A model generated the notes under the pieces. It did no database searches. It saw only the letters and a list, made by a program, of their open reading frames with translations, and was not told the origin of the DNA. 64,000 nt of DNA from Convolutriloba macropyga (Eukaryota): positions 13,268,001-13,332,000 of the forward strand of contig NC_134475.1 of the NCBI RefSeq assembly GCF_964194025.1, read 5' to 3'. Position numbers and translations under genes: made by a program. Positions 2,499-58,439 of the stretch are shown here, piece by piece (the first letter of the stretch is position 1; the number at the start of each line of letters is the position of its first letter).

Positions 2499-2709
2499 GG
2501 TTCTTTCACAAATTCCAAAGATGTTTGCCTCGAACCTGGAATCCGATCCTATTCTGGGTCCAGTAATGCAGGCAGGTCTGGACGCTCTCAAGTCTGATGG
2601 GAGAGCTGGAAAACTGTTTATATTCCATACAGCAATGCCAACTAGGGAGGCCCCTGGAAAATTAAAGCCCCGGGATCAACAGAGACTCCTGGGCACTGAC
2701 AAGGAAAAG
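2499..2709 (+). CDS. SEC24C: SEC24C/D COPII coat subunit, internal exon (trunk/vWA domain); gene starts upstream of window
   Basis: VLSQIPKMF...AGKLFIFHTAMPTREAPGKLKPRD...TDKEK matches the SEC24C/D trunk; tag acceptor ending 2498, gt donor 2710. Confidence 0.92.
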
Positions 2710-2943
2710 GTAGCACTTGATGACATCTTTAGCTGTGGTTATGATCAGAACTGGTTTCGTATCTTAATTTCAGAACAGGGAATTCGCAAATAAAAGCATT
2801 TCTTCATCTGCATTAATGTGTAATTTAGTAAGAGATAAAATTGATCAAGACAGTGCAATGAATAAAGCAATTTCAATTAATAAAATGTTAAAAATTACGC
2901 TTTGGCAATATGTTTTTATTTTTTTTTGATGTTTTCTGTTCAG

Positions 2944-3114
2944 ACCATTTTGAAGCCGCAGTCTGACTTCTACTCGAAACTGGGTGTGGAGTGTGTGAGG
3001 GCAGGCTGCTCTGTAGAACTGTTCATGTTCCCATTTGCCCATGTGGATGTAGCCACTCTAGGAGAGGTGCCTAAACTGACGGGAGGCCAACTTCATCTCT
3101 ACAACAATTTTCAA
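2944..3114 (+). CDS. SEC24C: SEC24C/D exon
   Basis: TILKPQ...ECVRAGCSVELFMFP...VDVATLG...LTGGQLHLYNNFQ; cag/gtcagt boundaries, phase 0. Confidence 0.93.
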
Positions 3115-3773
3115 GTCAGTTCCACCTTCAAGTGGTTGTAACTGCAACCGCTGCATGACATTTTACCAAATGCTAAATTACCCAATGTGCCAAAATAGCC
3201 AGTGCAATAATACACATTTGATCAATTAATTCCTTACAAATAAGCAGTTGGTGAAAAGAGTTACCAAGTCGATATTTGGTGATTTCAGCTGTGAATTCAA
3301 ACTACCTGAGTAGCTCTTGCGTTAGAAATGCTGTTGAAGTATTACCGGCCGGATAGCATAGAATGCTAATGAATATTATTTGTCAACATAGTGGAAGTGT
3401 TAACTTGATCTTTAAATCCCTTTCGCTGAAAAGCATACAAAAATGAATAAAATACCATGAATACGCAAGGTCCGAGGGTTAAAAATTAATTTGAAACATA
3501 GATTAATAGAATTTTTGACAGAGCAGCATCAGAAAGTTCCAGTGAACTGAAAAATGGACCATTTATGTCTTACTTTTACATATAAACCCCAAAAGCCTAA
3601 CTTGAATCCTTATATTTTTTCAAGTGATAATAAGTGATTTGAATGATATGAATTAACATGTAAATGTTTAACATTTGGTTAGTGTCGTGAAATTCACATG
3701 CTTGAATTGAAAAAAAATCTAGCAAATAGAATGGCATTTGAAAACTGTATCCAAATGTCTTAAATGTTTTCAG

Positions 3774-4016
3774 CCAAGCCTTGACGGTGACATGTTGATG
3801 TCGGATGTTGCGAGTTGTGTGCAGAAGGAGTATGGATTCGATGCTATGATCAGAGTCAGAACCAGTGCTGGACTTCGGCCCTGTGATTTCCATGGTAATT
3901 TCTACATGGAGACCGCACAGGACGTTGAGTTGGGAGCCATGGATCCAGACAAAACTATCCTGGTCGAGTTGAAGCATGACGACAAGTTGGACGAAAATGC
4001 CGGAGCACATGTTCAG
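3774..4016 (+). CDS. SEC24C: SEC24C/D exon (beta-sandwich)
   Basis: GFDAMIRVRTSAGLRPCDFHGNFYM...VELKHDDKL...HVQ; cag/gt boundaries. Confidence 0.93.
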
Positions 4017-4067
4017 GTAGAATGAATGCGATCAGATGTGTTTGATATTGCAAAGTTTTGTCTTATT

Positions 4068-5770
4068 AATAGCCGCACAGCGATAGCTGGGGCTATTATT
4101 GGCCTTCTCTTGGTTTTTTACAATTCAAAGAATTTGAATTGTATTGGGGCGCTGTCTTTTTTTTACGACTCGAAGAGGAGTATTGGAGAAGTCCTTTTTT
4201 TAATCAATTTTATTGGAGTGATTTTTGAAGCGGGAAATGAAACGCGTGAAAAAATTTGGAGTGATTTTGGGGCTGAACAAAAGTTAAGAGCGGAGCGAAA
4301 AGAGAGTGGTTTTTGTTCATACCGCTGTTTTTGCGAGAGCGAGAAATCGATGTGTGAAAAAATTTTCTCAGCGAGCGAAATTTTTTGTTCACGTGCGGCT
4401 TTTAAAAGCAGTTTTTTGCAACATTTGATGGTTATGAGGTTTGATTATAATATTGTATTAGTTTTACGCTTGTTTTGATAAAAATTGAAGGTTTCAAGTA
4501 GTTAATTCTGAGTTTAATGCTAATTTGGAGGGTTTTGATCAGTTTTGCTGATTTGTAGACGAAATTTAATGATTTTTTGCCTGTTTTTTCGTATTAATGC
4601 TTTAAATGGGATTTGAATAGAAGCTTGTTACTTAAGGAATATTCAGCTACCAAATGACTACAGTTTTATTGGTGTAAATCATTCTTTTCTTCGGAAAATT
4701 GACAGAAAAATCGAGAAATTTTAAACCATTTTTCTTATTTTTTTGCTGTTTTTCGTCTTAGTCTTAGACAAGTTTCTTAGCCTATATTGACTTGCCCATA
4801 TTGTTTGGCGAGCTTTTCATTGCCCTAATTGGAAAGGAATTTTACTCGGCTTTATCTTTCCTTGTACTATTAAAAAAACCTCATTAAGTTTTTCTAGTTT
4901 TTTATTCAATTTGTTTTTGAATGCCGTTTCTACTCTTCCTTAAATTTTTATGGCGTTTGTGGAGGTTCAGGGTTCACAATAGTTGTTCTAGGTGTGTAGT
5001 CAAAAGTATGGGCAATTTTCCTCTTCGAGTCGTTTCGGGATTTCTTCCGGCTATGTTTTTTTAAGATCTGTTCATACATTTTCATGATTTTTGAAGTCAA
5101 ATTGGAGTAGTGATTTTGGTCACGCCGAAACAGGAAGTGGAGCGAAAAAGCGAGTGGTTTTGTGGCGTGAAATTTTTTCGCTCTAAATTGAAAGTAGAGT
5201 GAGAAAACGGTGTTTGAACAAAAATTCGCTTTCTTGCTAGTGGTTTTTTGTTCATATGCGGCAATTTCACTTTGATTTTTACTGTTTTTCGAATTTTTGG
5301 ATCAGATTTTTTTTCTTAATGATTTTCCCAAGCCATTCATAATCCGTTCTAGGTCTAGTTTTCTGTTTAGTCAATGAAATTTCTTTGAATTGTACGTCAG
5401 GTCTTGTCCTGCTATGTTTTTTTTATTTCGTCGTCGCGATTTTTGTTACGACCATATGACGTCACAACCACTTCAAATCTGCTTTTTGTTCATTCGTTCA
5501 TGCAATTTCATCTGAAGTGCGTGCGTGACGTCATTTTTTGTTCTTAGTGGAGCGAGTTTTTCCGTTCATTCGCGTGATTAAATTTTTGGTCACACTTGAC
5601 TTACCTCACTCAAAAATGACTTCCTCACTTTGAAATTGACTTTTATTTACTTTATTTAATTCAAAGATTTGACCCTATATGGGTGTGTGTCACTCTAAAT
5701 GACGGTTATTAGAGATTAGCTAATAGAGGCAGCTATTGCGGCTATTTTCTGGCGATCTGCCAGCTATGTT
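4068..5770 (+). mobile_element. Composite A[B[C]]; B = ~4119-5418, C = ~4164-5057
   Basis: Three stacked 5' modules (aatagccgc / tacaattcaaa / tacgactcgaag), and three 3' modules in reverse order (cttcgagtcg / tttgaattgta / gcggctatt), each + hairpin + ctatgtt. Confidence 0.78.
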
Positions 5771-5985
5771 CATTTTTTTCCGTTTGCGATAGTGGTTTCC
5801 TTTCAAACGAAGCTTTTTCGGACTATTCATATTCTAAACAACAAAAGTAGTTTTTGCATTGCGTAACGCAAGATTCTTCAATTTCTTTGACGATGTCTGA
5901 TTTTTGAGCAACTATCTGCCTCAAAAATGTGTTTCTGTCTCTTTTAATGGCACAATAAAATAGCAGCAATACTTGTTTTGTTTAG

Positions 5986-6243
5986 GTTGCTCTACTGTAC
6001 ACAAATTTCAACGGAGAACGTCGACTGAGAATACACAATATGTCATTCAGTTGCTGTACTCAATTGAGTGACATGTACAAAGCTGTTGAGACAGATGTAC
6101 TTGTGAATTGGTTGGCAAAGGAGGCATCCAGGGCTCTGCTCAAAGACAATCCTAAGCAGGTCAAAGAGAGGATTGTGGACATGTGTGCGAACAGTCTGGC
6201 ATGTTATAGGAAGAATTGTGCTCAGCCTTCGTCACCTGGACAG
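5986..6243 (+). CDS. SEC24C: SEC24C/D exon
   Basis: VALLYTNFNGERRLRIHN...LACYRKNCAQPSSPGQ; tag/gt boundaries. Confidence 0.94.
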
Positions 6244-6642
6244 GTAGTTATTCACATATCTAACTTTACCCTTTCGGAGTACTGTCTCCTTTCCCATAAC
6301 AAATATTAAATCTGTTAAATGTCAAAATACTGTGATGTATGGAAAATAATTAAGCGGTCTCGGATTATTGGTGACGCTAAGATGATGATGGATGAGCGAT
6401 AATTGGCTGATAAGATGAATAGAAAATGAAAAATTGCTATATATGATAATCTGAAATTGACATTTGTTAAGCCTTATAATAGTAAATTTTCAATGCAATA
6501 GCTAGTGTCACCCCTTGAGCATACTGAAAAATGAGCCCTAGATTGTTAACAGGAGGGAAAATGAAACAGATCCGCTTTTTATCTTAAATGTTTTGGTTGA
6601 AGATCATCGATAATTTGCAGAAACAAGATACATCTGGCCCAG

Positions 6643-7059
6643 TTGACTTTCGTCCTCTAAAATGGGATAGAAGGTAACGCTCGGAGGACATAAAGTTCTT
6701 TTTTGGAGCCATAGGCCTTACTGGTCTCTAAGCAAGCGATTCGCCAAAACTGTTTTGAGGAGACAATTTCAAGGTGTCAGGGGGCGGTTCTTAGTCAGCG
6801 CCCTTGAGTTTGACCCCCCTCGGTCACCCCCGTCCACCCTCTTCCAAACTGTCGATTTGGACTCCCCTCTCGTCCAGCTCTCCCACAACCCCAACCCCCC
6901 TCTCCTGATCGCTGAAAACCCCCCCCCCCCAACTCTGCTCGGACTCTCTCTCCCCCCCCCCCCACTATGCTAGCACCCCTAAGCCCCTGCTGGCTACTAC
7001 CGAAGCAACCGCTCGCCGGTCGTTTGAGAGCAATTTGCCTTTCGTTAATCGGTTATGTT
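6643..7059 (+). mobile_element. Family E element (3' part) with C-rich tract
   Basis: ttgactttcgtcct...ggtaacgctcggagg...C-rich...gtttgagagcaatt...ttaatcggttatgtt; homologous to 41690-42450, 51950-52436 and 59658-60037. Confidence 0.6.
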
Positions 7060-7262
7060 CATTAGTATGCAAAAATACATATATCATTAGATTAGGCTCG
7101 TAAAGAAACATGTCTTCTGGTCACCGTGAGGTTATAATTCTGGAAATCCAGAAGTTACCAAATTTAAAAAAGCAGGCACACACCTAGAGCTAAGAGAAAC
7201 TTTTTATCTTTGAAATATTTGTGCTAATTGATGTCTACATGAAGAGTGTATTACCGTTTCAG

Positions 7263-7531
7263 CTTATTCTGCCCGAGTCAATGAAGCTCTTACCAGTGTA
7301 TGCAAATAACCTGCTCAAGAGCCAGGCGCTCTCGGGAGCCTCAGAGATAACAGTGGACAACAGAGCGCATCTGATGCACCTCCTGAACAGCATGACTGTC
7401 CCTGCATCATGTGCATACTTCTACCCCCGACTCATTCCCGTCCATAATTTGGATACATCTGCCAGTACCAATGCGTCGGCAGGAGATCAGAACTCTTCTG
7501 CTGAACAACAAAATATCCCAACTCCTGTCAG
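7263..7531 (+). CDS. SEC24C: SEC24C/D exon (helical domain)
   Basis: LILPESMKLLPVYANNLLKS...YFYPRLIPVH; phase-2 donor gttaga at 7532 matches the next exon. Confidence 0.93.
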
Positions 7532-8094
7532 GTTAGAACAAATTAAAATATACTGACGATGCTAAGCCTATATATTAAACGTGTGAGCTCTAAAGGGGGA
7601 CAAAATTTTTGCATGTTAAGGGGCCTCTCGAAGCGCATGTTTAAGAGCCGCATTGAGTAGCATGGTTATGCGAACATATCGAGAGAGGTCAATGACCTAA
7701 AAGGCTCAGAGTAGATGGATGAGAACTAAACATGGGACAAAAGACTGTTAGTCAGGTGCAGTTAACACGAGGCTATAAGGGCTTTAAAGTAAGCTCGCCC
7801 AGAAGGAGGATTAACTGTCATGGGTACTACGTGTTTTTTAATTGCTCCCGAATGAATTTTGAGGTATTTATTATAAACGTGTGTTTTTCTGCACAGTTTT
7901 ATCTTTACAGATTCTGCGCTATTCTAGAACACTCTTAGCTTACAACTAAGTTTTTCACGCTTTACTTTTTGATTTTTGTGTGATCTCAAATGCTCTTAAT
8001 CTGAATTTTGTTTATTGATAAGATAAAAGCGATTGTGAGAAACGGTGGTTTTTAGTTGTTATAGCGCAGTTGGTAAGATGGAGGACTGCTAATC

Positions 8095-11000
8095 TGAAGT
8101 TTGAAGTATTTTTCTATTACCATTATCCATAAAATTGCTATGAAACTAAGTTTTGAGCGAGAAGTGTTAGTCGTATTGTCTATTTTTCCGCTTTTATAGT
8201 AAATATCAGTCGAAATTGAGCACAATGATCAACCGCGCTCATGTCGTGACATGTTTTAGGGGTCCTTAATGCAACCTAGCATAAATGCGTTTTGAGAAGC
8301 GCTTTACCATCATATTTAAGCTTCTCATAAAAACCTTAACTACTTTTAAACCTTCTATTCGTGTAAATGATTTTCTTGTTAATAGGCGCCCTCATCGTCT
8401 CAGCCGGCTATTATAGCGCTCCTGTTTTTGTTTACTTCGTCGAACATTTTTTCGCTTTACCATTTTGCCGCTTTTTCGACATTTTGCGTGAAATCTTTTT
8501 GACTTCTCTAGGCTAGTTTCTCTCTTCTCTCATTCTTCTAAAAGTGAATTTGAACATCATTTGCTCAGCAAAGCAATTCAAAATGAACAGAGTCAGTATA
8601 AAAAATTGAAGTCAGAAATAGAAACGGGATAAACCCATAAAGCCCAATTTTAGATGCCCGCTATTTGAACGTCGTTCCTATAAGTCTTAGTTACCATTTC
8701 TTATGCTTATTAATAGCCGCCCTCATCTTCTCAGCCGGCTATTATAGCGCTCCTATTTTTTTACAATTCAAAGAATTTGAATTGTATTGGTGCGCTGTTT
8801 TTTTTTTTTAAGATGTTCACACGTTTTTCAATGACTTTGATCTTTCGAAACGGGATAAACAGGTAAAGCCCAGCGGGCATTAAGTTTCATTAGAGGCCCA
8901 AAGTGGGCTTTAGTAGTTCTTCAAGTGCGTATAGTGGTGCAGCTGCTGGGATGGCTTTAAATAAAGGTTAAAAGGTCATTTTTAGGAGTTTTTCGTCTCA
9001 AAATGGTGCAATTTTTCGTGTTTTTTGTGATTTTTTTTGAGATTTTTGTTTGATTAGTCTAAGGTTGAAGTTTTTAAAAGCTGATGAAGGCCTTTTGCGA
9101 GACAAAATTGCTTGTTATGACCATTTTATGGGCTATATGTCGTGGTACTACAAACACAAACACACAAAATGATACTCATTTTTGCAATTTTTTTCAGGTT
9201 TTTTGAAAATTTTTGTCATTTTTTGAGTTTTTAGCCCTAGGTGTCACGAAACCTCATCTAGGGTTTGATAAAGGGTTGGATGATAGGTTACTGCACAGTT
9301 TCTAGTGGTAATGGAACGGTTTTCAACTTTTTGACATCATGAATTTTAGCATTTTTTGACAAAAGTTGCAAATTTTTCATGTTTTTTGACATATTTATTG
9401 TCATCCTTCAAGTTGTTTGAGTCCCAGGGGCAAGAAACCCGTATTAGGGGTTGGATAATAAGTTACTGAAAAATTTTTAGTTGCCATGGAATAAGTTTCA
9501 ACTTTTGAATATCACAAGTTTTAGCAATTTTTTTAAACAAATTTGCATTTTTTTCAGGTTTTTGAAAATGTTCATCATTTTGTCAGTTTTTCGAGTTTCA
9601 GGGACCAGGCAATCTCCGTTGAGGTTTGTTAATAGGGAACTGCATAGTTTCTAGCAACAATTGAATGCTTGTTAACTTTTTAATATCTCGAATTTTAGCA
9701 TTTTTTTGATAAGATCTGCAATTTTTTTAATGTTTCCTAAAGTTTTTGTCAGTTTTTGATATTCGTCGATTCTCAAGTGCAAGAAAACCTATTCCGCGTT
9801 TTGATAAAAAAAGTTACTGCATGGTTTTTAGTTTCATTGGATTTGTTTTCAACAATTTAACCTTTCGTCTTTTAGAACTTGTTTGATAGAATTTGCAATT
9901 TTTTTTCAAGTTTTTTTGTTTTAAATATTTGTATTTTATTTATTTTTTCTTGCCTCAAATGCCAGGTAAACGCATCCAGGGTTTGAAAATATTTTATTAA
10001 ATAGTTGCTAGGGGCAATTGAATGGCTTGAATGAAGTTTGAAGTATTTTTCTATTACCATTATCCATAAAATTGCTATGAAACTAAGTTTTGAGCGAGAA
10101 GTGTTAGTCGTATTGTCTATTTTTCCGCTTTTATAGTAAATATCAGTCGAAATTGAGCACAATGATCAACCGCGCTCATGTCGTGACATGTTTTAGGGGT
10201 TCTTAATGCAACCTAGCATAAATGCGTTTTGAGAAGCGCTTTACCATCATATTTAAGCTTCTCATAAAAACCTTAACTACTTTTAAACCTTCTATTCGTG
10301 TAAATGATTTTCTTGTTAATAGCCGCCCTCATCGTCTCAGCCGGCTATTATAGCGCTCCTATTTTTGTTTACTTCGTCGAACATTTTTTCGCTTTACCAT
10401 TTTGCCGCTTTTTCGACATTTTGCGTGAAATCTTTTTGACTTCTCTAGGCTAGTTTCTCTCTTCTCTCATTCTTCTAAAAGTGAATTTGAACATCATTTG
10501 CTCAGCAAAGCAATTCAAAATGAACAGAGTCAGTATAAAAAATTGAAGTCAGAAATAGGAACGGGATAAACCCATAAAGCCCAATTTTAGATGCCCGCTA
10601 TTTGAACGTCGTTCCTATAAGTCTTAGTTACCATTTCTTATGCTTATTAATAGCCGCCCTCATCTTCTCAGCCGGCTATTATAGCGCTCCTATTTTTTTT
10701 ACAATTCAAAGAATTTGAATTGTATTGGTGCGCTGTTTTTTTTTTTTTTAAGATGTTCACACGTTTTTCAATGACTTTGATCTTTCGAAACGGGATAAAC
10801 AGGTAAAGCCCAGCGGGCATTAAGTTTCATTAGAGGCCCAAAGTGGGCTTTAGTAGTTCTTCAAGTGCGTATAGTGGTGCAGCTGCTGGGATGGCTTTAA
10901 ATAAAGGTTAAAAGGTCATTTTTAGGAGTTTTTCGTCTCAAAATGGTGCAATTTTTCGTGTTTTTTGTGATTTTTTTTGAGATTTTTGTTTGATTAGTCT

Positions 11001-11968
11001 AAGGTTGAAGTTTTTAAAAGCTGATGAAGGCCTTTTGCGAGACAAAATTGCTTGTTATGACCATTTTATGGGCTATATGTCGTGGTACTACAAACACAAA
11101 CACACAAAATGATACTCATTTTTGCAATTTTTTTCAGGTTTTTTGAAAATTTTTGTCATTTTTTGAGTTTTTAGCCCTAGGTGTCACGAAACCTCATCTA
11201 GGGTTTGATAAAGGGTTGGATGATAGGTTACTGCACAGTTTCTAGTGGTAATGGAACGGTTTTCAACTTTTTGACATCATGAATTTTAGCATTTTTTGAC
11301 AAAAGTTGCAAATTTTTCATGTTTTTTGACATATTTATTGTCATCCTTCAAGTTGTTTGAGTCCCAGGGGCAAGAAACCCGTATTAGGGGTTGGATAATA
11401 AGTTTCTGAAAAATTTTTAGTTGCCATGGAATAAGTTTCAACTTTTGAATATCACAAGTTTTAGCAATTTTTTTAAACAAATTTGCATTTTTTTCAGGTT
11501 TTTGAAAATGTTCATCATTTTGTCAGTTTTTCGAGTTTCAGGGACCAGGCAATCTCCGTTGAGGTTTGTTAATAGGGAACTGCATAGTTTCTAGCAACAA
11601 TTGAATGCTTGTTAACTTTTTAATATCTCGAATTTTAGCATTTTTTTGATAAGATCTGCAATTTTTTTAATGTTTCCTAAAGTTTTTGTCAGTTTTTGAT
11701 ATTCGTCGATTCTCAAGTGCAAGAAAACCTATTCCGCGTTTTGATTAAAAAAGTTACTGCATGGTTTTTAGTTTCATTGGATTTGTTTTCAACAATTTAA
11801 CCTTTCGTCTTTTAGAACTTGTTTGATAGAATTTGCAATTTTTTTTCAAGTTTTTTTGTTTTAAATATTTGTATTTTATTTATTTTTTCTCGCCTCAAAT
11901 GCCAGGTAAACGCATCCAGGGTTTGAAAATATTTTATTAAATAGTTGCTAGGGGCAATTGAATGGCTT
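8095..11968 (+). repeat. Near-perfect direct tandem duplication, ~1.94-kb unit (8095-10028 and 10032-11968)
   Basis: Both copies start tgaagtttgaagtatttttctattacc and end ggggcaattgaatggctt; only scattered substitutions and homopolymer-length differences. Confidence 0.92.
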
Positions 11969-13210
11969 TCAACATTTTAATAGAAGGAATTTCTATTTTG
12001 AAGTTTGAAATTCTTAAAATTTATTGCCTATCGATCTATGAGCCACTGATTTTTTAATTGTTCGAATTGGGTTACTGGATAGCCTCTAGAGACACAGAAA
12101 TGATTCTGAAGATATTTATATCACAATTTTCAGCAACATTTTCTTATAACTTGCAATTGATTTCTTTTTTTATCTTAAATTTTTTGGTCATTTTCAAGAT
12201 AATCGATCTTCAAGGGCCAATGAGTATTTTTCAGGTATTGCAGATATAATACTGGACTGATTTCAGAAACAAAAATTGGTTTTGAACATATTTTTGTAAT
12301 AGGTGTTTAAAGGGAAAAAGTTTTGCCCTAGGTTTAAAAGCTTCAAGAGTTTTAGCAATGAGTTTGTTTTTGTTTAGTTTTGATTCTTTTAGTTACTCAA
12401 TTCTTTTGTGATTTTTGTGTTCTGGCTGGCATTGTTCAATTGATCTGCTGATCAGGTAGAGTGCGTCCAAGTTTTTCATTCAATTCTTTGAATTGTATTT
12501 CAGGACTTGTCCTGCTATGTTTTTTACTTCGTCGAATAAAGAAATGTTTCGCTTTACCTCATTTTGCCGCCTTTTCAACATTTTGCGTGAAATATTTTTG
12601 ACTTCTCTAGGCTAGTTTCTCTCTTCTCTCATTCTGCTAAAAGTGAATTTGAACATCAGTTGCTCAGCAAATCAATTCAAAATGAAAAGAGTCAGTGTAA
12701 AAAATTGAAGTCAGAAATAGAAACGGGATAAACCCATAAAGCCCAATTTTAGATGACCGCTATTTGAACGTCGTTCCTATAAGTTTTATTTACCATCTCT
12801 AATGCTTATTGTTATTGATAGTAGCCCCTGTAGCCTCTCTATAAGAAACAGAAGTATGTTCAACTACGAAATGCCATCAAAATAAATCGGACTTAAATAA
12901 AATGTTTTTGTACAAAAATCTTTTTTTTTTCAATATCTTCTGTTATTTCAATCCCAATCATGCTTATTGGAATCAACGGCGGCTATTTTCCGGCAATCTG
13001 CCGGGTATGTTTGGTATTGATAGTAGCCACTGTAGCCTCTCTCTAAGAAACAGAAGTATGTTCAACTACGAAATGCCATCAAAATAAATCAGACTTAAAA
13101 ATGTTTTCGTACAAAAATGTTTTTTTTTTCAATATCTTCTATTCTTTCAATCACAATCATGCTTATTGGAATCAATGGCGGCTATTTTCCGGCAATCTGC
13201 CGGGTATGTT
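10318..13210 (+). mobile_element. A' element containing a second A'[B'] (10649-13011; B' = ~10700-12521)
   Basis: Two aatagccgccctcatc 5' ends and two ggcggctattttccggcaatctgccgggtatgtt 3' ends; the outer body resumes at 13012. Confidence 0.75.
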
Positions 13211-48397: not shown

Positions 48398-48665
48398 GTA
48401 AGTGCAAATCACTTCTTCTATCTTTCCTTTATCAACTCCAGCAACCACTTTTGTATTCAATAGGCAGCACTGCCGGTTTACATATAGGGTGAGTAGTAAG
48501 AAATGGGGATTAATCAGCATTCATTTTTCTATATTTTGAAACGTCCGCCATTTTCACAAGCGCCTTCCCTCGCACTATGTTACCCTGACAAAAGCATAAT
48601 AGGGGCTATAATGCGAAAGACGCCAATATTATTACCGGAGGAGACTAAAAATTTCTGTGTTACAG

Positions 48666-48849: not shown

Positions 48850-49250
48850 GTTAGTAGATAAGCTGTCAACACAAAGGTTTTTCTTAACCGAGTAAGTGGT
48901 GTGTTTTGTGGAAGATTACTTATCCATGTTTCATCCTTGAATTTTATGAAAAGCAGCTATCACATACTATGATTGTATGGCACTTCAATAGTACTTTTCA
49001 TCATATCCCTGCATGGTAATTTCTGTTTTTTTTGCATCCGGCAGAAGTTAGTGACTGTTTTGTGTTCTTGCTATCCTAGTTTTCTTGAACAGTTTTGATC
49101 GAACACCATATCATTCAGTAAGGTGATCCTACAAGTATATAAACTGTGATTGCTTTTATTTTTTGCTCGTATATTGTGAAACTATATTTCTCTGTTTTCC
49201 TTGAATTTTTAGTTGGTCGGCTTGTCAGGTGATTTTTTCTTTCAATTTTT

Positions 49251-50996
49251 AATAGCCGCCCTCATCTTCTCAGCCGGCTATTATAGCGCTCCTAAATTTT
49301 TTTTACAATCCAAGAATTGGATTGTATTGGTGCTCTGTCTTTTCTTTTATTTTTGTAAGATGTTTTCACACTTTTCATGACTTTGAGCTTTCAGAACAAG
49401 ATAAACAGGTAAAGCTCAGCGGTCATCAACGTTCATTAGAGGCCCTTAGACGCGCTTAATAGTCTTTCAATTGCTTAGAGTGGCGAAGCTACTGGAAAGG
49501 CCGTAATTCAAGGTTAAAAGGTCATTTTTAGGAGTTTTCGAGCCCAAAATGTTCCAATTTTTTTGTGTTTGTTCGCCATTTTTCGAATTTTTTGTTGGAC
49601 CAGTCTAAAATTGAGGTTTGTAAACGTTGATAAAGGTCTTTTTCAAGGCATAATTATTTTCTATGATCGTTTTAGGAGCTATATGTTTTGGTACTCCAAA
49701 TATAAACACGCAATTTTATACTAATTTTTACAATTTAAAAAGTTTTAATAAGTTTTTTTTGTCATTTTTTGAGCTTTTTCAGACCTAGGTTTCAAGAAAC
49801 CTGCTTCAGTGTTTGATAATAGGTTACTGCATAGTTTCTAGTGTTAATGGAATGGCTTTTGAACATTTTAACATCACGAGTTTTTGCAATTTTTTTGGAA
49901 GTTTTTGTCATTTTTTAGGTTTCTCAATCATCAAAGGCCACGGAATTTCCTCTACGGTTCAATACTAGGTTACTGCATATTTTCTAGTGGCAATGAATAA
50001 GTAACTGCACATTTCTTTAGAGGTAATGTGTTGGTTATCAATTTTTTAATAACATGAGTTTTTCTAATATTTTGTAATTGTTTTTTCTAAATTTTTTTGC
50101 CATTTCTGAGTTTAACTATCTCTGCTGGCCCACAAAACTTTTTCGGTCTTGCAGTTGGGTTATATGGCAGAACACCACGGACCAAAAATGGTTATGAACA
50201 TTTTATTGCCGCAAAATTTAGAAACTTTCTTTAAATTTTGCACTTGTCAGTTTTTACGTTCGTCAAATTTCTCGAGTTTGTCTACCTTTAGTGGAGTCTC
50301 TTTCATGTCTTGTGCGTGAGTAAATGAGTATATTGAATTGTATCATATTTGGCCTTCATGATAAAAGCTTCAAGAGTTATCCGTGATTATTTTCTTATTT
50401 ATTTTGTTTGATTATTTTAATTTCTCAACTTTGAGATTGTCTTTTTGCTGGGATTGTTCAATTGATCTGCTGGTCAGGTTCTTTTTAGTTCTCAGTATTT
50501 CATTCAATTCTTTGGATTGTATTTCAGGACTTTTCCTGCTATGTCTTTTTACTTTGTTGAACTTTTTTTCTCTTTTCCCATTTTGCCGCTTTTTCGACAT
50601 TTTGCGTGAAATCTTTCGACTATTCTAAGCTAGTTTCACTCTTTTGTCTTTCTGCTAAAAGTTATTTTGAACATCAGTTGCTCAGCAAAGCAATTCAAAA
50701 TGAACAGAGTCAGTATAAAAAATTGTCAGAAATAGAAACGGGATAAAGCCCATTTTTAGATGCCCGATACTTGAACTTTGTTCTCATAAGTTTTAGTTAC
50801 TATCTATAATGCTTATTGGTATTGATACTAGACCATGTAGCCTCTCACTGTTAAATTACGAAATGGCATCAAAATAAATTGCACTTAAAAATGTTTTTAT
50901 ACAAAAATCAATTTTTGTTGAATTTTTCTTTTCTTTCAATCCCAATAGAGTTATGGGAATCAACGGCGGCTATTTCCCGGCAATCTTTTGGGTATT
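49251..50996 (+). mobile_element. Composite A'[B']; B' = ~49304-50544
   Basis: Homologous to 10649-13011; B termini carry the covarying tacaatccaa/ttggattgta variant. Confidence 0.75.
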
Positions 50997-51029
50997 TTTT
51001 TTATCTTTTTTACAAAAAATTTTTTTAAT

Positions 51030-51397
51030 TTAATTTCAGGACTTGTCATGACTGCGTGACATCATTTCTCACTCTTAGTGGAGCGATTTTTTTTGTTCAT
51101 TCGCGTGATTATGTATTTGGTCACACGTGACTTACCTCAACCTCAAAAATGGCTTCCTCACTCTTAAATTGATTTTTCATTACTTTAATTCAAAGAGAGA
51201 AGGTCAAGTGGATGTGTGTTACTCTAAATGAAAGTTATTTGAGAGCAGCTAATAGAGGCAGCTATAACTTAAGCAGATTCCTAATGAAATTGTAATATCT
51301 CGTCCTTTAATGAAAACTATTTTTCGTCTGTCTTTTTCACTGTTTTTGCGACTTCAGATCGATGAAGCTATTGCGGCTAGTTTCTGGCAAATATGTT
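51030..51397 (+). mobile_element. 3' fragment of an A[B] composite
   Basis: caggacttgtc remnant, A body with gacttacctc, gcggctag-ttctggcaa-atatgtt. Confidence 0.6.
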
Positions 51398-51949
51398 TTT
51401 GACTAAGATATTTAATTTTAGAATGACGTCAATTGATAAATGACTAAGATCTGACAATTTTTTCAGTTCGAGCAATGTTCTTTCGATTTTTGTTTTATTT
51501 TGATATCAGCAGACCGCTGCTCAAAAGTTTTTTGAAGGTTTAAAATAGATGATCGGTACTATTGAAGAGAAATTTGAAACTGAAAAAACAACCTGCAAAA
51601 AATTTTGAATTTAGGATGTGTTCGAAAGAGGTTAATTATTTTGACATGACACTGATAGAGCAAAGTCTCTTTCCACTTATATGAAGGAATGAATATAAAT
51701 GAAGTCACAAGTAATTCAGTGCTAACAGGTTACAGAAAATACTGAACAGGTTTGCCTTTTTAATTTAATTAGAACATCAAAACTGCAAAACTCTTCCAAA
51801 TATTTTTTATCGTTTTTAGAAAGAAGTGAATTGACCAAATGTTTACGATCTGGTTACAATTTGCAGTTGAGGTGATTTTTTGTCAGCAACGTTTCATTAA
51901 TACCAGAAGTGACGCTCATTTTTTTTAATTCCTCAAACGAAGTTTAGCT

Positions 51950-52436
51950 TTTATATTAGTCCTGTCGGTCTGTTTTTAATGCAATTTTTTGTCCGAGCCA
52001 TTTGATTTTTCGTGCTCAAAAACAGGATGAACAGGCAGCGCCCTGCGGGCATTAAGTTCTCTTAAGGGTCCTTCAGCTCACTATCATCCAAACATGTGGT
52101 ACACAGAAACTGTTTTCTAGACTTATTTACACTTATGGTGTGAAGAATGGTTCCTAGAGGTTGAACCCCCCCCCCCCCCGCTGATCACCACCACTCGCTT
52201 CACCACCAATCCCCACCCTTGCGTTCAGGCCGTACGGGCCACTTGATTCTAAAGAGCCCATCTCACTCCCCCCTCACTGTTGTCTCCACCACCGTCAGCC
52301 CAGCCCCCTCAGTGCTCGCCCCGCTGCGTTCACATCACGCCCCTTCAATTAACCTAAAGCTAGCATCACAAAACTGTGGCTAGCTACTGACGAAGTCAAA
52401 CGCTCGCCGGTCGTCCGACGTTAATCGGTTGTGTTT
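51950..52436 (+). mobile_element. Family E element with C-rich tract
   Basis: Homologous to other E copies; ends ccgacgttaatcgg-ttgtgtt. Confidence 0.6.
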
Positions 52437-54436
52437 ATAGTTTCTAGAAATCAGGGAGACCGTTGCTTTTATTTGAGAATTAGAACTGGGGTTTCAAGAG
52501 TTTTGAGACAAAGAAAATTTTGTGAATTTTGCAGAGGAATAGTTTCAAGCCTGCATAACCTTTGCCTTTTGAGATGTTTTCGGAAGTGATTGATAAATTT
52601 GATATCGGAATGTGCCTCAAATGTTGCGTTAGAGGCTGGAGAGTTCAAATCGAAATTAAAGAAATATTTTCTCGCAAACAGAATTTTTTTCACTCTGGGT
52701 GAATACTTCAAGTAGTGCTTTTATTTGCCATCAAAGGCCAGAGCAACTCAATTTTCTGTTGAAATTGTAAGGATAGACTCGCGTTGCTTTTTTTGTCACA
52801 ACAATGTAATGCGGTGTCAAAATTCTTTGATGGTAATCAGCGTATTTATGCGTATATCTCCATGACAATACGATGATCGCCATTTTTTGTGCTGAAAGTT
52901 TTTTTGAGATTTGACCCTTGCAATTGCATAGAAGTTAAAAAACATTTCAGAAGCTGAGTCATCGCTCGCAAAGTAATTTGCACTCCTCCTAAAGCAGCAT
53001 CCCTTATTCGTTCAGTATTAACCAATTGATGACATGAAATTAATCAAAAGAACACTTGTTGATTCAAAAATCAACCTAGTCTAGAGAATCATTACTGATT
53101 GTCAATAAGAACACAGTTCCTATAATGCATCTGAACATTTAAATTAAAATTTGAACCTGCTGCCATTAAAGCGAATTTATTGGAATATGAATGCCCATCT
53201 GAGATAATTTTTTTAGTTATATATTTTTATATTAATTTCATTAATTCCCGGAAACATAATTCTAGTTAACAAAGATCAGACCCAACGTTCAAATCTTTGA
53301 ATAACATTTGATCAAAACAGAAACGAATCGGAAAAAAAAACGAAAAAGGTCTTACAGATATAACGTGGCAATTGTTATCACATTAACATATGTTATAACA
53401 TATCACAAAATGTATAAAACTGAAATTCAAATCAGTTAAAGATAGGAAACACTAAAACTTTGCACTTGCATCGATGTTTTTCAATGTTTCATGTCAATCA
53501 ATGATTTTCTAATCCCTCCTCTAAAACACATTCGAAAACTTCTTCATATTGTGAGCTCTTTTCTGGAGCTTTGACAGCGTCATTGACGTCATTTTCCTCA
53601 CTTATCTGATATCAATGACACTGAAAAGTTCTCCGAACCACGGCTGACACCTTTCTTCGCAATAACAACCGGCTTTACAACCGTTTACTTGATTGTTGAT
53701 CTCTGCAATTCCTGTCATGAACTGGTTTTGTTAACTGCACTAACATGATCCTTCAAATGAATACAAACTTTGACAAACTTAAATTCTCTTCACTGCGCTT
53801 GAAGCTTCCGCTGTGCATTACATTTTAAAATATGCCCTTTTTGCCAAATTTAGCGCTAACTTAAGTACCCTTCGAAGCTGAAGTCGGACATGCCTCTGAA
53901 CTCTGGGTATTGTTCACCGTCCCATCTTACTCAGGTTTCTTATTGTCGTCGTTTTTGAGAAAGTCTCATCTTTCCCTGTAGGAACTGTCGCCTCATTCTC
54001 TTCGTTCTTTTTGTACCTCTTCCTTGGTTGCAGGAACACGGCCAGTTGCGTAACAGCTAATCGACCCCACTTCTTGTAAATTGGGGTTGAGCGGATCAAT
54101 GTTTAAGCCAATTAAAGAAGAGCTGACGAATTAAATTTCACAGGCTGATTTTTAACTTCGGTAAATGATTCACCGCATTTTTCTCCGCAAATCAGAATAT
54201 TGGGATGCACTTATATTATTTTCCAGTTCCCTTTCAATATGCGTAATAGAAAGTTCAACATCCTTCTCCGCACTTCCAAATGTTTTAAAATTGCTCTTAA
54301 GTGATGAGGGGCGTGGTGCACTGTGTTGTTGAGGTGGTGGTGGGAAACGTTAGGGGGATCTGGTATAGAGGGGGGGGGGGGGGGGTGTGAAGCTTGAACG
54401 TAGAGCCCCTCCAACCTGGCGCTGTTTTGATGAGGA

Positions 54437-54473
<37 letters not shown>

Positions 54474-54485
54474 GGGGGGGGGGGG
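54437..54485. repeat. (GT)n microsatellite followed by poly-G
   Basis: Directly visible. Confidence 0.9.
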
Positions 54486-55746
54486 TTAAATATTTAGATT
54501 TATATATAGGACAAATTCCCCGTTCAAGCCCTCCACCTCGGCGCAGTCTCTAGGTTAGGATGTTGAGATAATGGCTTAAGCATTTTGCCGTTTTTTGTCC
54601 ACGCTGAATTAATATATAGATATTATTTGTCAATTTTGCTCGCTTTTTTGTAAAATCTTGAACAACAAAGATTTTGGAAATTTTTGTAGCTATTTGACTA
54701 TCAGGGGGAATTGAACTTTTTTCATGACTTGCACTTGAGGTATTAGGTGGGTTTTGCAGCACAAAATTGATTTTGAAGCTATTTACTTCAGAAAAGTTTT
54801 GTTAATTTTTAACCTCTTTTTGTCGCTTTTTGCTTTTCTTTGTCTATTAGATATCCACCTGGTTTTACTCAACATTGCAGGTTATTTTTTGTTGGGCTCA
54901 TGAATGAATTAGTTTGATCTGAAGTCGTCTTCGCAAATGTTTGACAAATTAGCAATGATTCCACATTTTTCAGTTTTATGTGGTCAGGAAAACTTCCTTT
55001 GATCAAGAAGCTGCTCTTGCGTTATTTTTACAATAGGTTTTTTCGTTAGTTTTTAAGCATGACATCTGAGTTTAGGAAGACCAAAAATCTTCAGCGTATC
55101 TTCAGTTTCTTGTTGATTTTCTTACATTATTTGATGTTTTTAACTGCATCTGATTGCGTCTTATTTAATCTTCAGCTCCCTCCGAATTGAATCCGCTAAT
55201 TTAATTAGCGGCGGTGTATTAAAAAATATATAAAGGAGATGTACCATAAAAACAGCTTGTTTTTATTTAGTTCTCGTTGTGTAATTTTTTAACATAAATT
55301 TTGTTCACTGAAATTTAACGTTATAAACTCAAGATATATGCGAAAATTAAGGTTTGAAATATTTAATGGCTATTTAATTGTAATATTCGAAACAGTTCAA
55401 AAACGTAACTACGTAATAAACTACTTAAACGCTTGTTTACTAATGAAACCACTAAGGCACAAATCAATTAAACACAACCTCAAAATATAAAAATTAACAT
55501 CAAGTAGTCTGTGTAATTTGCGTTTGCATATAATGTTCCAACGCTGCTCATCCACATTTTGGCTAATTTTCTATCAAATAAAGAAGAGTTAGAAAACTAT
55601 CAAAAATTCAAATATTGTTCAAATTGTTGGTGTCTGAAAAAAATGCTCTCAACTCAAATCACAAAGTAAAGTAAATATTACCTCAGAGGGTTGATATGAC
55701 TTGCCATTAATAATATTCTGGGACAACACAAACAACAAAATTAAAT

Positions 55747-55813
55747 AACATCAATGAATATCATTTACATCCAAAACTCAATGTTTTGGATGTAAATGAT
55801 ATTCATTGATGTT
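55747..55813. repeat. Perfect inverted repeat, 31-bp arms, 5-nt loop
   Basis: aacatcaatgaatatcatttacatccaaaac-tcaat-gttttggatgtaaatgatattcattgatgtt. Confidence 0.95.
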
Positions 55814-57192
55814 CATTGATATTCATTGAAAAAGATACTGAACGAAGTCAAAGCAGAGCCAACAAAACCTATTTTAGACAAAATTAATGATTTTAAATTA
55901 ATTCTGTTTCACTAGAAAAAATTCGTGAAAAGTCTTAGTGATATTTGGCAAAATTCTGACAAAAAAGAACAAAAACGGCAGAGTTAAGAATATGTTTATA
56001 TTTTTTGAGAATAAATAATTTTTGAATACTGAAAACCATTAGATGTCAACTGAAATCTTAAATAGGTGTTTGTTCCATAGGAAGACATTGAGACCTGTCA
56101 TTATCCAGAACATGTTGTACGTCTACAAAATCAAACGACAAATACAGAAAACAAAAATTCAATTAAACTTTGCGAGAAAACGGCGTCGAAGCCATTACAA
56201 CCATAATCTGTTCCGTAAAGATTAAGATATAATCAATTGTTTGAACAAGAATAATGTGATATGCCACCTGTATTTATTGAGACACGGTAACCAGTAAAAA
56301 ACTTTAGCTGTCAGCTCAAATCAGTAAATAGGCTCCTTTATTCATCCATAGGATGCCGCTAAGACCTGTAATTGACCAGAGTTTTTTATACGGCTACAAA
56401 AACAACGGCAAATAAAGACGAAAATTTCCAATAAGTTCTACAAGATAAGGAGTGACAATCTGAATTAGTTTTGGACTGTAGAATGCAACGGTTTGATCAA
56501 AACTATCCTTGCTGTTGCTGGTCGTCCATTGGGAGTACCTAATGGTTCCAAATTTTATGGATATAGATAATTTGGCAAAAAAGTCAATAAATCAAAAATA
56601 AATTATTCATTTTGGAAAGTTAGAGATAAATTAGCAAAAAAAATGGCAACATTTTAGTTCAAGAACACTCTCAAAGGAAGCGGAAGTGAAACTATTACTC
56701 TTTGGAGTTAATGGAGAATGTTTGAGAAGTTTTTTAGGAGTATTGATTCGGCAAATTTGTCTAGAGAAGTTTATTTCGTCTTTTTTTGAAAGGCTGGATT
56801 TTTAAAACAATTAGCCAAAAAGTTGCATCAGACAGTTCAACAATCTTCTAATCTTTAGAGGTAAAAGCAACAGCACTATCGTTAGCAGGTTTGACACGTG
56901 TTAGTAAAATTGGCAAAAAAATTGCGTTAAAGTACTGAAAATGTGATAAAACAACGAAAATCAGTCAAATATTCACGGGGAAAAAACGAAATTCAAAAAT
57001 TTTTGTCATTTATTTTACGACAGACTTTCTAATGATACCACTCATAGACCTCTATGATGACTATAGCGATGGGCCAAAATTCTCTTTTGAGTAAATAGTT
57101 CCTCCCCTCTAAAGTGGGGTCTGAACGCTAATTTCCGATTTCTATTACATGTAATATTTTAGTATTTTAATTCAATTTATGTCTGCTTACAG

Positions 57193-57293
57193 GCGATGGC
57201 ATTGGAGGAGGCCAGACAACACCCGCTGGTTATGCAGAGACTGTTTGACATCCCAGAGCACTTTTGGAGCCAGTTCCTCACCCCATCGTCCAG
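57193..57293 (+). CDS. RACGAP1: RACGAP1 exon 7 (end of RhoGAP)
   Basis: AMALEEARQHPLVMQRLFDIPEHFWSQFL resembles RACGAP1 [21 protein letters not shown]. Confidence 0.9.
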
Positions 57294-57860
57294 GTAAAGT
57301 GCTGTTACGTGTTTAAGCGTTCTAGTTGTCATTAGAACTAAATTAAGTCTTCTGAACATTTAACAGAAAACCTTCAAGTACTCTGAGGAGATACTTTTCG
57401 AGGCTCAGAATGTTAGTCACTCGTCAAAATTTCGGTTCTCTCATCTTTATGTTCACCTGTTGCTACTATATTGACCCTATCAATTTTAAGTTATAGTTGG
57501 TTCTAAGCTCTACATAACTGAATCAGATTCGCTACCAGGACAAAAATGGCCAATGTTTCAAAATATTTACGCAATATTTGAACCTATGGTTGAAATGATG
57601 AAAAAGAGACTATTCAACATAATTGTAGCTGTGCGAGGTAATTTATATATTTAAAATTTATAATCCCGAGATTATTCATTCCTAAAGTGTGAAAATTTAT
57701 ATTGGGGATATATTCAACGATGTTGTTACGTAGTAAAGCGCGCCTGTCCGACGTTTTTGAATCCGATTGAATCAGAAACGGAAAAACTTGCCTGATGTAA
57801 GAATCAGTTCGAAAGCGTTTATTGTGACTTGATATTCATTATTTGTGTGTAATTTGTAAG

Positions 57861-58003
57861 CGGTGGAGCACAACACGATACGGATGCGACTTCATCTGAA
57901 TCGGACGTGCCTCCTGTCACTCCAGCAGGATGTCCACGAACACCTGGCACTGTGCTCAGAACAATCAGTGAAGACCGTCTGTTGGATAGTGCAGGGGGTA
58001 CAG
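57861..58003 (+). CDS. RACGAP1: RACGAP1 exon 8 (S/T-P-rich tail)
   Basis: GGAQHDTD...PPVTPAGCPRTPGT...; only the AAG acceptor at 57858-60 keeps frame among nearby AGs checked; gtgagt donor at 58004. Confidence 0.72.
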
Positions 58004-58320
58004 GTGAGTGCTGTTTCCTCCACTGACTTGAAGTTCTTTCAAATGCTTTGCTTAATTTATTGTGTATCTACAGGTAGCGTCTAAGTACTCTACTCCCCCA
58101 ATAGTTATTTAGTCTACGAGACATTCGGCGGATCATGAATGGCTCCCCGGTGAGCTATAGCTCAAAAACGGGTGGGTGTCTTACAGTTTATCTTGGGACT
58201 AATTGGAATTAAATCCTCCGGTTATGTTTATGGTAATGGAGTGGACTATATCATGCCCATTAAACGTGGGGGGGGGGGGGGGGGCTATAATGGAAAAGCG
58301 GAACTTAGAGTTGTTAACAG

Positions 58321-58439
58321 GTACTGATTCGGATACTCCGGTGATGTACGGACCTAGCAGTGCTGTGGCTCACAGGACAAGGTACAAGAACATCGGCATC
58401 AACAAGGGATCTCGATACTTCACGTCTCCTCTAAGATAG
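58321..58439 (+). CDS. RACGAP1: RACGAP1 terminal exon (spliced 613 aa)
   Basis: ...GSRYFTSPLR* resembles the RACGAP1 C-terminal FFASPMLK; phase-1 cag acceptor. Confidence 0.82.

What the first reader, a model, noticed from the sequence alone, without database searches (positions are those of the whole stretch)
2499..58439. Candidate spliced-leader trans-spliced operon: SEC24C-DCTN5-PRCC-TRAPPC13-RACGAP1
Seen: five unrelated housekeeping genes on one strand. All four complete genes have a T-rich tract + AG acceptor just before the ATG (AG ends at 25032, 32089, 35772 and 37823; 16, 6, 12 and 9 nt from ATG). Stop-to-start spacers are 5071, 2286, 2051 and 411 nt, and the middle two are mostly transposon. 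Established: unpaired acceptors close to the ATG in co-oriented, closely spaced genes mark SL trans-splicing and operons in nematodes, tunicates and flatworms. Inference: this is a polycistron in a lineage with kb-scale repeat-filled introns, i.e. an operon inflated by transposons to more than 55 kb. Membership of SEC24C is the least certain.
Basis: partly seen in the sequence, partly recalled or inferred. Interest (0 to 1): 0.85.

Follow-up and report, generated by a model that had tools for sequence, protein, structure and literature searches.

The report
Probable trans-spliced gene cluster in an acoel
Five same-strand housekeeping genes of the acoel worm Convolutriloba macropyga each carry a real splice acceptor just before the start codon and keep their order in related acoels where they lie only 150-500 bases apart, so this is probably a spliced-leader operon swollen by transposons, but no transcript data could be reached to prove it.

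Summary
The window is from the acoel Convolutriloba macropyga. SEC24C-like (its 5' end lies outside the window), DCTN5, PRCC, TRAPPC13 and RACGAP1 lie on the + strand with exactly the reported spacers. TTTTCAG occurs 28 times on that strand. Four copies end 16, 6, 34 and 9 nt before the four start codons, about 1e-7 by chance.

An acceptor 5-34 nt before the ATG is present at all 13 orthologous gene starts examined, in five acoel species. The gene order is kept. In compact relatives the spacers are 154-215 nt (DCTN5 to PRCC) and 345-529 nt (the others).

[quoted passage not shown] I found no paper reporting operons in acoels.

The operon reading is plausible for DCTN5 through RACGAP1 but unproven, because no cDNA was reachable. 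SEC24 probably stands apart: the only conserved non-coding block lies between it and DCTN5. In one relative an 18-kb Polinton sits between TRAPPC13 and RACGAP1, which weakens that link.

Repeat-inflated operon spacers were already proposed for the flatworm Macrostomum. Other first-stage notes flag similar clusters elsewhere in this genome; none of them is verified.

The parts
2499..19977 (+). SEC24C-like gene, 3' part only. The window starts inside the trunk domain and the 5' end lies upstream of the window.
   Evidence: Pfam Sec23_helical and Gelsolin. Best solved relative is Sec24C. The last exon aligns to S. roscoffensis and sp4. Mid-gene start read.
20856..20960 (+). The only conserved non-coding block found in any of the four spacers. 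It holds a CCAAT-like and a TATA-like motif (CCAATGTTGAACTATATAAAG). It is a candidate promoter of the DCTN5 unit, or the SEC24 3'UTR end.
   Evidence: 80% identity over 91 nt to L001 802-891, E 1e-12, and partly to L006. No Rfam match and no stable fold. The function is inferred.
25026..25032 (+). TTTTCAG acceptor 16 nt before the DCTN5 ATG.
   Evidence: Orthologous acceptors: S. roscoffensis AATTCCAG and sp4 CCTTTCAG.
25049..29809 (+). DCTN5 CDS. Exons 25049-25215, 28920-29089 and 29595-29809 give 183 aa.
   Evidence: Pfam DCTN5. Length matches the 183-aa gene model. Splice sites read.
31541..32042 (+). Copy of the window's commonest interspersed repeat, with a Helitron-like hairpin (CTGGCA-ATC-TGCCAG). 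It ends 41 nt before the PRCC acceptor.
   Evidence: Depth 11 in the sensitive self-comparison. Sequence read.
32083..32089 (+). TTTTCAG acceptor 6 nt before the PRCC ATG.
   Evidence: Orthologues: S. roscoffensis TGTTTAAG, sp3 TATTTTCAG, sp4 GGTTTAAG.
32096..33733 (+). PRCC CDS. Exons 32096-32684 and 32970-33733 give 450 aa.
   Evidence: Pfam PRCC. Identical to P0051, XP_075251471.1. Intron.
34090..35630 (-). Decayed, 5'-truncated LINE fragment, antisense to the genes. It holds an RT motif (LSPMLFNIYM), the post-RT region and a C-terminal zinc knuckle, with frameshifts.
   Evidence: Minus-strand translations. Weak atlas hits to zf-RVT and RNase_H. No Pfam hit. The motif assignment rests on my knowledge of LINE ORF2.
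35744..35772 (+).
   Evidence: Orthologues: S. roscoffensis ATTTTTAG, sp3 TTATTCAAG, sp3b CGTTTTCAG.
35785..37421 (+). TRAPPC13 CDS. Exons 35785-36013 and 36445-37421 give 401 aa. The gene has no intron in S. roscoffensis or sp3.
   Evidence: Pfam TRAPPC13 N, M and C domains. P0038 is XP_075251472.1 of Convolutriloba macropyga..
37817..37823 (+). TTTTCAG acceptor 9 nt before the RACGAP1 ATG.
   Evidence: Orthologues: S. roscoffensis GTGTTGCAG, sp3b TCTTTACAG, sp3 GGTAATTTAG.
37833..58439 (+). RACGAP1 (MgcRacGAP/CYK-4-like) CDS range, 613 aa. It has an N-terminal coiled coil, a C1 domain and a RhoGAP domain, and introns of up to 8.3 kb.
   Evidence: RACGAP1 is by far the best solved relative: E 3e-20 against 2.5e-5 for chimaerin.

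Best explanation
The window is a conserved acoel gene cluster, SEC24C-like > DCTN5 > PRCC > TRAPPC13 > RACGAP1, in Convolutriloba macropyga.

Each of the four complete genes begins with a functional 3' splice site a few bases before its ATG. This site most likely receives the acoel spliced leader by trans-splicing.

The cluster most likely descends from, and may still be, a spliced-leader-resolved operon that starts at a promoter between SEC24 and DCTN5. In that model the RNA upstream of the DCTN5 acceptor is discarded as an outron. PRCC, TRAPPC13 and RACGAP1 are cut out of the polycistronic precursor by 3' end formation of the upstream gene plus trans-splicing at their own acceptors.

In C. 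macropyga the spacers were enlarged by insertions: an antisense LINE and Helitron-like repeats. After subtracting these, the spacers resemble those of compact relatives.

Shown: the genes, the acceptors, their conservation, the compact orthologous spacers and the transposon content. Inferred: SL use at these sites, co-transcription and the promoter position.
For: 1. Acceptors. Four of the 28 TTTTCAG copies on the + strand lie 6-34 nt before the four ATGs, about 1e-7 by chance.

2. Conservation. An acceptor 5-34 nt before the ATG is present at all 13 orthologous starts, in five species, although the flanking non-coding DNA cannot be aligned.

3. Organism and leader. The window is C. macropyga. 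Its relative S. roscoffensis has a published 32-nt SL, and 30.2% of its genes are trans-spliced (PMC9911081).

4. Compact orthologous spacers.
- DCTN5 to PRCC: 215 nt in S. roscoffensis and 154 nt in sp4.
- PRCC to TRAPPC13: 529 nt in S. roscoffensis and 355 nt in sp3b.
- TRAPPC13 to RACGAP1: 345 nt in S. roscoffensis and 411 nt in this window.

The 154-nt spacer of sp4 has no usable donor at least 40 nt before the acceptor (read).

5. Synteny. Every adjacency recurs in at least three species.

6. Conserved blocks. No conserved block exists in the three internal spacers. One exists upstream of DCTN5.

7. Repeat-adjusted spacers. PRCC to TRAPPC13 shrinks to about 510 nt. The repeat that ends 41 nt before the PRCC acceptor leaves no room for a conserved proximal promoter.

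8. No other gene model lies in the spacers.
Against: - No transcript evidence could be obtained. SL use at these sites and a polycistronic precursor are both inferred.
- Three of the four spacers in this genome (5071, 2286 and 2051 nt) exceed usual operon spacing.
- In sp3 an 18-kb Polinton lies 195 nt after the TRAPPC13 stop and about 2.1 kb before RACGAP1. This essential gene therefore tolerates a spacer of about 20 kb, which is easier to explain if it has its own promoter.
- In sp3 and sp3b a paladin-like gene, not DCTN5, precedes PRCC, so the cluster is not inviolable.
- The S. roscoffensis acceptors are weaker (AATTCCAG, TGTTTAAG).
- SL trans-splicing in C. macropyga itself is known to me only from unverified scan notes. 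No SL copy is in the window.
Confidence: 0.55

Rival explanations
1. The genes are separate, SL trans-spliced, monocistronic genes. Each has its own promoter in the spacer upstream, possibly inside or beyond the inserted repeats, and an outron that is removed by trans-splicing. Co-orientation and synteny would then be inherited linkage, or the remnant of a former operon, and not current co-transcription.
For: [quoted passage not shown] The spacers here are 2-5 kb. The 18-kb Polinton between TRAPPC13 and RACGAP1 in sp3 is tolerated. PRCC has a different upstream neighbour in sp3 and sp3b.
Against: The 154-nt and 215-nt DCTN5 to PRCC spacers in sp4 and S. roscoffensis must also hold the DCTN5 3'UTR. 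The internal spacers have no conserved element. In this window a repeat ends 41 nt before the PRCC acceptor, and the LINE about 110 nt before the TRAPPC13 acceptor.
Confidence: 0.25
2. The introns are ordinary cis-spliced 5'UTR introns. Each gene has a non-coding first exon in the spacer, and its donor pairs with the acceptor before the ATG. No spliced leader is involved.
For: An acceptor alone cannot tell cis from trans splicing. In S. roscoffensis the region between the conserved block and the DCTN5 acceptor contains donor-like GTTAAT about 127 nt upstream of the acceptor, so DCTN5 could be conventional. 70% of S. roscoffensis genes are not trans-spliced.
Against: The compact DCTN5 to PRCC spacers leave no room for a 3'UTR, a promoter, an exon and an intron. 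All 13 acceptors sit 5-34 nt from the ATG, as trans-splice sites typically do (this last point is my knowledge). Conserved housekeeping genes are the class enriched for SL trans-splicing in M. lignano.
Confidence: 0.12
3. The T-rich CAG motif is a core-promoter initiator, with transcription starting at or near TCAG(A/T)T, and not a splice acceptor. That would give very short leaders.
For: TTTTCAGAT recurs at DCTN5, PRCC and TRAPPC13 here and at TRAPPC13 of sp3b. TCAGTT at RACGAP1 resembles an arthropod-type initiator (the resemblance is from my knowledge).
Against: What stays invariant across orthologues is a pyrimidine tract plus AG (TTTAAG, TTCAAG, TTTTAG, TTGCAG), not an initiator consensus. 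No TATA-like element lies about 30 nt upstream. Cis-intron acceptors in the same genes look the same.
Confidence: 0.03

Closest known systems
[quoted passage not shown] 2022, PMC9911081)
   Same: It is the same family of worms. The orthologous cluster is present in that genome (L001, L004). A 32-nt SL is published and 30.2% of genes are trans-spliced.
   Different: The paper never mentions operons. It does not list which genes are trans-spliced. The window is from another genus, where SL use is not published as far as I could find.
Repeat-inflated operons of the flatworm Macrostomum lignano (Ustyantsev and Berezikov 2021, PMC8629364)
   Same: Genes are co-oriented and SL trans-spliced. Intergenic distances become short, with a mode near 100 bp and a threshold of 1 kb, only after repeats are subtracted. 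The trans-splice acceptor motif is [T/C]TNCAG. Conserved housekeeping genes are enriched. By that criterion PRCC, TRAPPC13 and RACGAP1 would qualify if they are trans-spliced.
   Different: It is a different phylum. There the SL reads were mapped; here none were. DCTN5 to PRCC is at most about 1.25 kb after subtracting only the repeats visible within the window.
Nematode (C. elegans) and chaetognath (Paraspadella gotoi, PMC12460157) operons
   Same: Same-strand housekeeping genes, downstream genes headed by a strong acceptor, and order conserved between species. The chaetognath operons were called with spacing under 250 bp plus SL reads.
   Different: Spacers here are 0.4-5 kb. There is no evidence for an operon-specific leader such as SL2. 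Introns are kb-sized and filled with repeats.

Membership tests
SL-resolved operon | Adjacent genes on one strand with no intervening gene | tested here: met
   All five genes are on the + strand, and no gene model lies in the spacers.
SL-resolved operon | Short intercistronic distance, typically 100-500 nt. M. lignano used under 1 kb after repeat subtraction; chaetognaths used under 250 bp. | tested here: inconclusive
   In the window the spacers are 5071, 2286, 2051 and 411 nt. Only the last passes as it stands. PRCC to TRAPPC13 is about 510 nt after subtracting the LINE. DCTN5 to PRCC is at most about 1250 nt. The orthologues give 154-215, 355-529 and 345 nt.
SL-resolved operon | Downstream genes begin with a 3' splice acceptor that has no cis donor upstream | tested here: met
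   The acceptors are present, enriched and conserved. The lack of a usable donor was read only in the 154-nt sp4 spacer. It was not proven elsewhere.
SL-resolved operon | Mature mRNAs of the downstream genes carry the spliced leader | not testable with these tools
   No acoel transcript contigs were found for TRAPPC13 or PRCC. The metatranscriptome proteins start at Met with no leader translation.
SL-resolved operon | One promoter and a polycistronic precursor RNA | not testable with these tools
   The evidence is indirect only. A conserved block lies upstream of DCTN5 and none lies in the internal spacers. The Polinton in sp3 argues against dependence of RACGAP1 on an upstream promoter.
SL-resolved operon | The organism has an SL RNA and SL trans-splicing | tested here: inconclusive
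   This is published for S. roscoffensis. For C. macropyga I have only unverified scan notes. No SL copy is in the window, and none was expected there.
SL-resolved operon | Gene order conserved between species | tested here: met
   SEC24-DCTN5-PRCC occurs in 3 species. PRCC-TRAPPC13 occurs in 4. TRAPPC13-RACGAP1 occurs in 4, one of them with a Polinton between the genes. No background rate of synteny was measured.

The most novel reading that the evidence does not exclude
DCTN5-PRCC-TRAPPC13-RACGAP1 is a true polycistronic unit, which would be the first operon documented in Xenacoelomorpha and would be conserved across acoel genera. Its intercistronic regions behave like introns: RNA polymerase reads through kilobases of inserted LINE and Helitron-like DNA, and in one relative perhaps through an 18-kb Polinton, before trans-splicing rescues the downstream gene.
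Probability: 0.3. Interest if true: 0.65.

Novelty: new member of a known kind. Interest (0 to 1): 0.45.

Why it matters
Spliced-leader trans-splicing and operons are scattered patchily among animal phyla, and their origin is debated. Acoels sit at or near the base of Bilateria.

SL trans-splicing is published for one acoel. I found no paper reporting operons in acoels or in Xenacoelomorpha.

This cluster is a concrete locus on which public RNA-seq could show whether acoels have operons. It is conserved in five species, with spacers from 154 nt to about 20 kb. The same locus could show how far an operon spacer can be stretched by mobile elements before co-transcription fails.

It also matters for annotation of these genomes, because such gene starts and boundaries are easily mis-called.

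Tried and rejected
- Transcript evidence. Homologue searches for TRAPPC13 and PRCC, and cluster listings, found only genomic (ENA, NCBI) and Tara metatranscriptome proteins. There were no Logan cDNA contigs of acoels.
- Published SL. The S. roscoffensis SL and its halves, allowing mismatches, were absent from the window and from all loci.
- Rfam. No hit at the gathering threshold over the whole window, and none at E<=1 in the SEC24 to DCTN5 spacer. No tRNAs were found.
- Pfam on spacer ORFs gave nothing. The LINE was recognised only from translated motifs and weak atlas hits.
- A position weight matrix built from 8 cis acceptors overfitted, with negative leave-one-out scores, and I dropped it in favour of heptamer counts.
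- A second C. macropyga contig, fetched in the hope of another haplotype, was identical over 20.7 kb and gave no information.
- Inverted-repeat search in the two middle spacers gave only a 23-nt pair at 30320/30585, a possible small foldback element.
- The conserved block does not fold better than shuffled sequence, z 0.37.
- I considered using the common orientation of all repeats as a test of spacer transcription. I did not pursue it, because no control region with genes on the minus strand was available.
Full report
WHAT IS THERE

The window has about 35% G+C, and T exceeds A on the + strand throughout. It carries five genes on the + strand.
- SEC24: Pfam finds Sec23/24 helical and gelsolin domains at 7221-7553 and 13399-13818. 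Sec24C is the best solved relative.
- DCTN5: Pfam hits at 28906-29091 and 29594-29806.
- PRCC: Pfam hit at 33017-33730.
- TRAPPC13: all three TRAPPC13 domains at 35785-36015 and 36495-37418.
- RACGAP1: C1 and RhoGAP domains at 47391-47657 and 48661-48852. RACGAP1 scores E 3e-20 against 2.5e-5 for chimaerin.

The window's TRAPPC13 and PRCC pieces cluster with XP_075251472.1 and XP_075251471.1 of Convolutriloba macropyga. Locus L003 of assembly GCA_964194025.3 is identical to window 25785-47421. The organism is therefore this acoel.

The gene models give DCTN5 183 aa, PRCC 450 aa, TRAPPC13 401 aa and the RhoGAP protein 613 aa. I could reproduce the lengths of DCTN5, PRCC and TRAPPC13 with canonical GT-AG introns. 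SEC24 enters the window in mid-gene.

THE OBSERVATION

To test against chance I counted the textbook acceptor heptamer TTTTCAG. It occurs 28 times on the + strand and 27 times on the other strand. Four of the 28 copies end 16, 6, 34 and 9 nt before the ATGs of DCTN5, PRCC, TRAPPC13 and RACGAP1. Only 1.75% of all + strand ATGs have one within 40 nt, which gives roughly 1e-7 for four out of four.

The motif was chosen after looking. Looser patterns (TTTYAG, or five pyrimidines plus AG) still give 6e-5 to 1.5e-4.

For TRAPPC13 the consensus site ends at 35750. Either could be used.

Only one of eight cis-intron acceptors that I defined is TTTTCAG. The pre-ATG sites are therefore at least as strong as ordinary acceptors.

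RELATIVES

I fetched the orthologous regions of four further acoel-like genomes.
- Symsagittifera roscoffensis (L001, L004), named through XP_063716879.1.
- Two unnamed species, sp3 (L002, L007, L008) and sp3b (L005). They are 84% identical to each other in TRAPPC13 DNA, and their non-coding DNA cannot be aligned.
- A 4-kb metagenome scaffold, sp4 (L006).

Gene order:
- S. roscoffensis: SEC24-DCTN5-PRCC-TRAPPC13-RACGAP1.
- sp4: SEC24-DCTN5-PRCC, after which the scaffold ends.
- sp3b: paladin-like-PRCC-TRAPPC13-RACGAP1.
- sp3: paladin-like-PRCC-TRAPPC13-[Polinton]-RACGAP1.
These orders rest.

Stop-to-ATG spacers:
- SEC24 to DCTN5: 5071 nt (window), 1007 nt (S. roscoffensis), 1090 nt (sp4).
- DCTN5 to PRCC: 2286 nt (window), 215 nt (S. 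roscoffensis), 154 nt (sp4).
- PRCC to TRAPPC13: 2051 nt (window), 529 nt (S. roscoffensis), 853 nt (sp3), 355 nt (sp3b).
- TRAPPC13 to RACGAP1: 411 nt (window), 345 nt (S. roscoffensis), 826 nt (sp3b), about 20.4 kb (sp3).

At every one of the 13 gene starts, a pyrimidine-rich tract ending in AG lies 5-34 nt before the ATG. The surrounding spacer DNA shows no detectable similarity between species. These are selected 3' splice sites.

CIS OR TRANS, OPERON OR NOT

The S. roscoffensis genome paper reports the leader GCCTAATTGTTGTGATAAACTTATTAAATAGA and 10,433 trans-spliced genes, 30.2% of the total. It does not contain the word operon (PMC9911081 and its preprint). Searches for operons in acoels, Xenacoelomorpha, Hofstenia or Symsagittifera found nothing relevant. 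The C. macropyga genome note has no annotation or splicing analysis.

The strongest argument for co-transcription is the DCTN5 to PRCC junction. In sp4, 154 nt separate the DCTN5 stop from the PRCC ATG. The introns in that species are about 55-60 nt, and I see no donor-like GT far enough upstream of the acceptor. In S. roscoffensis the spacer is 215 nt. These stretches must already hold the DCTN5 3'UTR. A promoter, a leader exon and an intron do not plausibly fit as well.

In the window itself, a copy of the commonest repeat ends 41 nt before the PRCC acceptor, and the LINE fragment ends about 110 nt before the TRAPPC13 TTTTCAG. Whatever RNA reaches these acceptors must therefore have been transcribed through, or from within, inserted DNA.

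Only one non-coding block is conserved in any spacer. It is window 20856-20960, matching L001 802-891 at 80% over 91 nt (E 1e-12), and it is partly conserved in sp4. It lies between SEC24 and DCTN5 and reads CCAATGTTGAACTATATAAAG. It has no Rfam match and no fold. It could be the promoter of a unit that begins with DCTN5. It could equally be the end of the SEC24 3'UTR. This is inference.

EVIDENCE THAT CUTS THE OTHER WAY

In sp3 a Polinton of 18,116 bp lies 195 nt after the TRAPPC13 stop, and RACGAP1 follows about 2.1 kb beyond it on the same strand. The element has terminal inverted repeats of roughly 1-1.5 kb at 94-96% identity. It carries genes for a B-family polymerase, an integrase, a double-jelly-roll capsid protein and an A32-like ATPase.

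RACGAP1 in other animals is an essential cytokinesis gene (my knowledge). A gene of this kind that tolerates such a spacer more easily has its own promoter, unless the allele is rare or the polymerase reads through the element. PRCC has exchanged its upstream neighbour in sp3 and sp3b. Three of the four spacers in the window are long.

TRANSPOSONS

The PRCC to TRAPPC13 spacer is about 75% a decayed, antisense, 5'-truncated LINE. Its minus-strand translations show an RT motif, the post-RT region and the C-terminal zinc knuckle, broken by frameshifts. Without it the spacer would be about 510 nt, like the 355-529 nt of the relatives.

The DCTN5 to PRCC spacer is at least 45% repeats, and SEC24 to DCTN5 at least 35%. 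These are lower bounds, because I could compare only within the window.

Repeat-inflated operon spacers are not a new idea. [quoted passage not shown]

VERDICT

My estimates:
- The four sites are real leader-addition acceptors: about 0.9.
- They take the SL: about 0.7.
- At least DCTN5 and PRCC are, or recently were, co-transcribed: about 0.6.
- The whole DCTN5-RACGAP1 unit is one polycistron in C. macropyga: about 0.35.
- SEC24 belongs to it: about 0.1.

This is a likely new phylum-level instance of a known kind of system, testable at once with public reads. Other first-stage notes in this scan flag similar operon-like clusters and SL-tagged LINEs elsewhere in the same genome. I did not verify those.

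Noticed in passing
window 1-64000: Almost all interspersed repeats in the window lie in the same orientation relative to each other: 362 plus/plus HSPs (74 kb aligned) against 4 plus/minus HSPs (252 nt). This includes copies in the spacers and downstream of RACGAP1. It could reflect selection linked to transcription, or orientation-coupled nesting of Helitron-like elements.
   Followed up: partly
window 8095-10028 and 10032-11968: A tandem duplication of a 1.94-kb unit at 99.5% identity lies inside the SEC24 gene, in an intronic region.
   Followed up: no
window 36014-36444, 29090-29594; L001 11768-12006: Introns have turned over between C. macropyga and S. roscoffensis. The TRAPPC13 intron and DCTN5 intron 2 exist only in C. 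macropyga. An intron in the first RACGAP1 coding exon exists only in S. roscoffensis. All the introns I inspected are canonical GT-AG.
   Followed up: partly
L007 1140-19255 (same as L002 about 11390 onward): An apparently intact 18.1-kb Polinton/Maverick lies in sp3, 195 nt downstream of TRAPPC13. It has long terminal inverted repeats that contain internal tandem repeats.
   Followed up: partly
L001 9795-9870: A tRNA-like segment (…GGTTCGAATCC…) lies in the S. roscoffensis PRCC to TRAPPC13 spacer. ARAGORN does not call it a tRNA, so it may be a tRNA-derived SINE head.
   Followed up: no
window 25038-25046; L001 8009-8017: A minimal upstream ORF, ATG-NTG-TGA, lies between the acceptor and the main ATG of C. 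macropyga DCTN5 (ATGGTGTGA) and of S. roscoffensis PRCC (ATGCTGTGA).
   Followed up: no
L005 14811-18682: A Copia-type LTR retrotransposon (RVT_2, rve) lies on the minus strand inside or after the first intron of RACGAP1 in sp3b.
   Followed up: no
window 30320-30607: A 288-bp unit is bounded by 23-nt inverted repeats at 91% identity and encloses an 82-codon minus-strand ORF with no Pfam hit. It may be a small foldback element.
   Followed up: no
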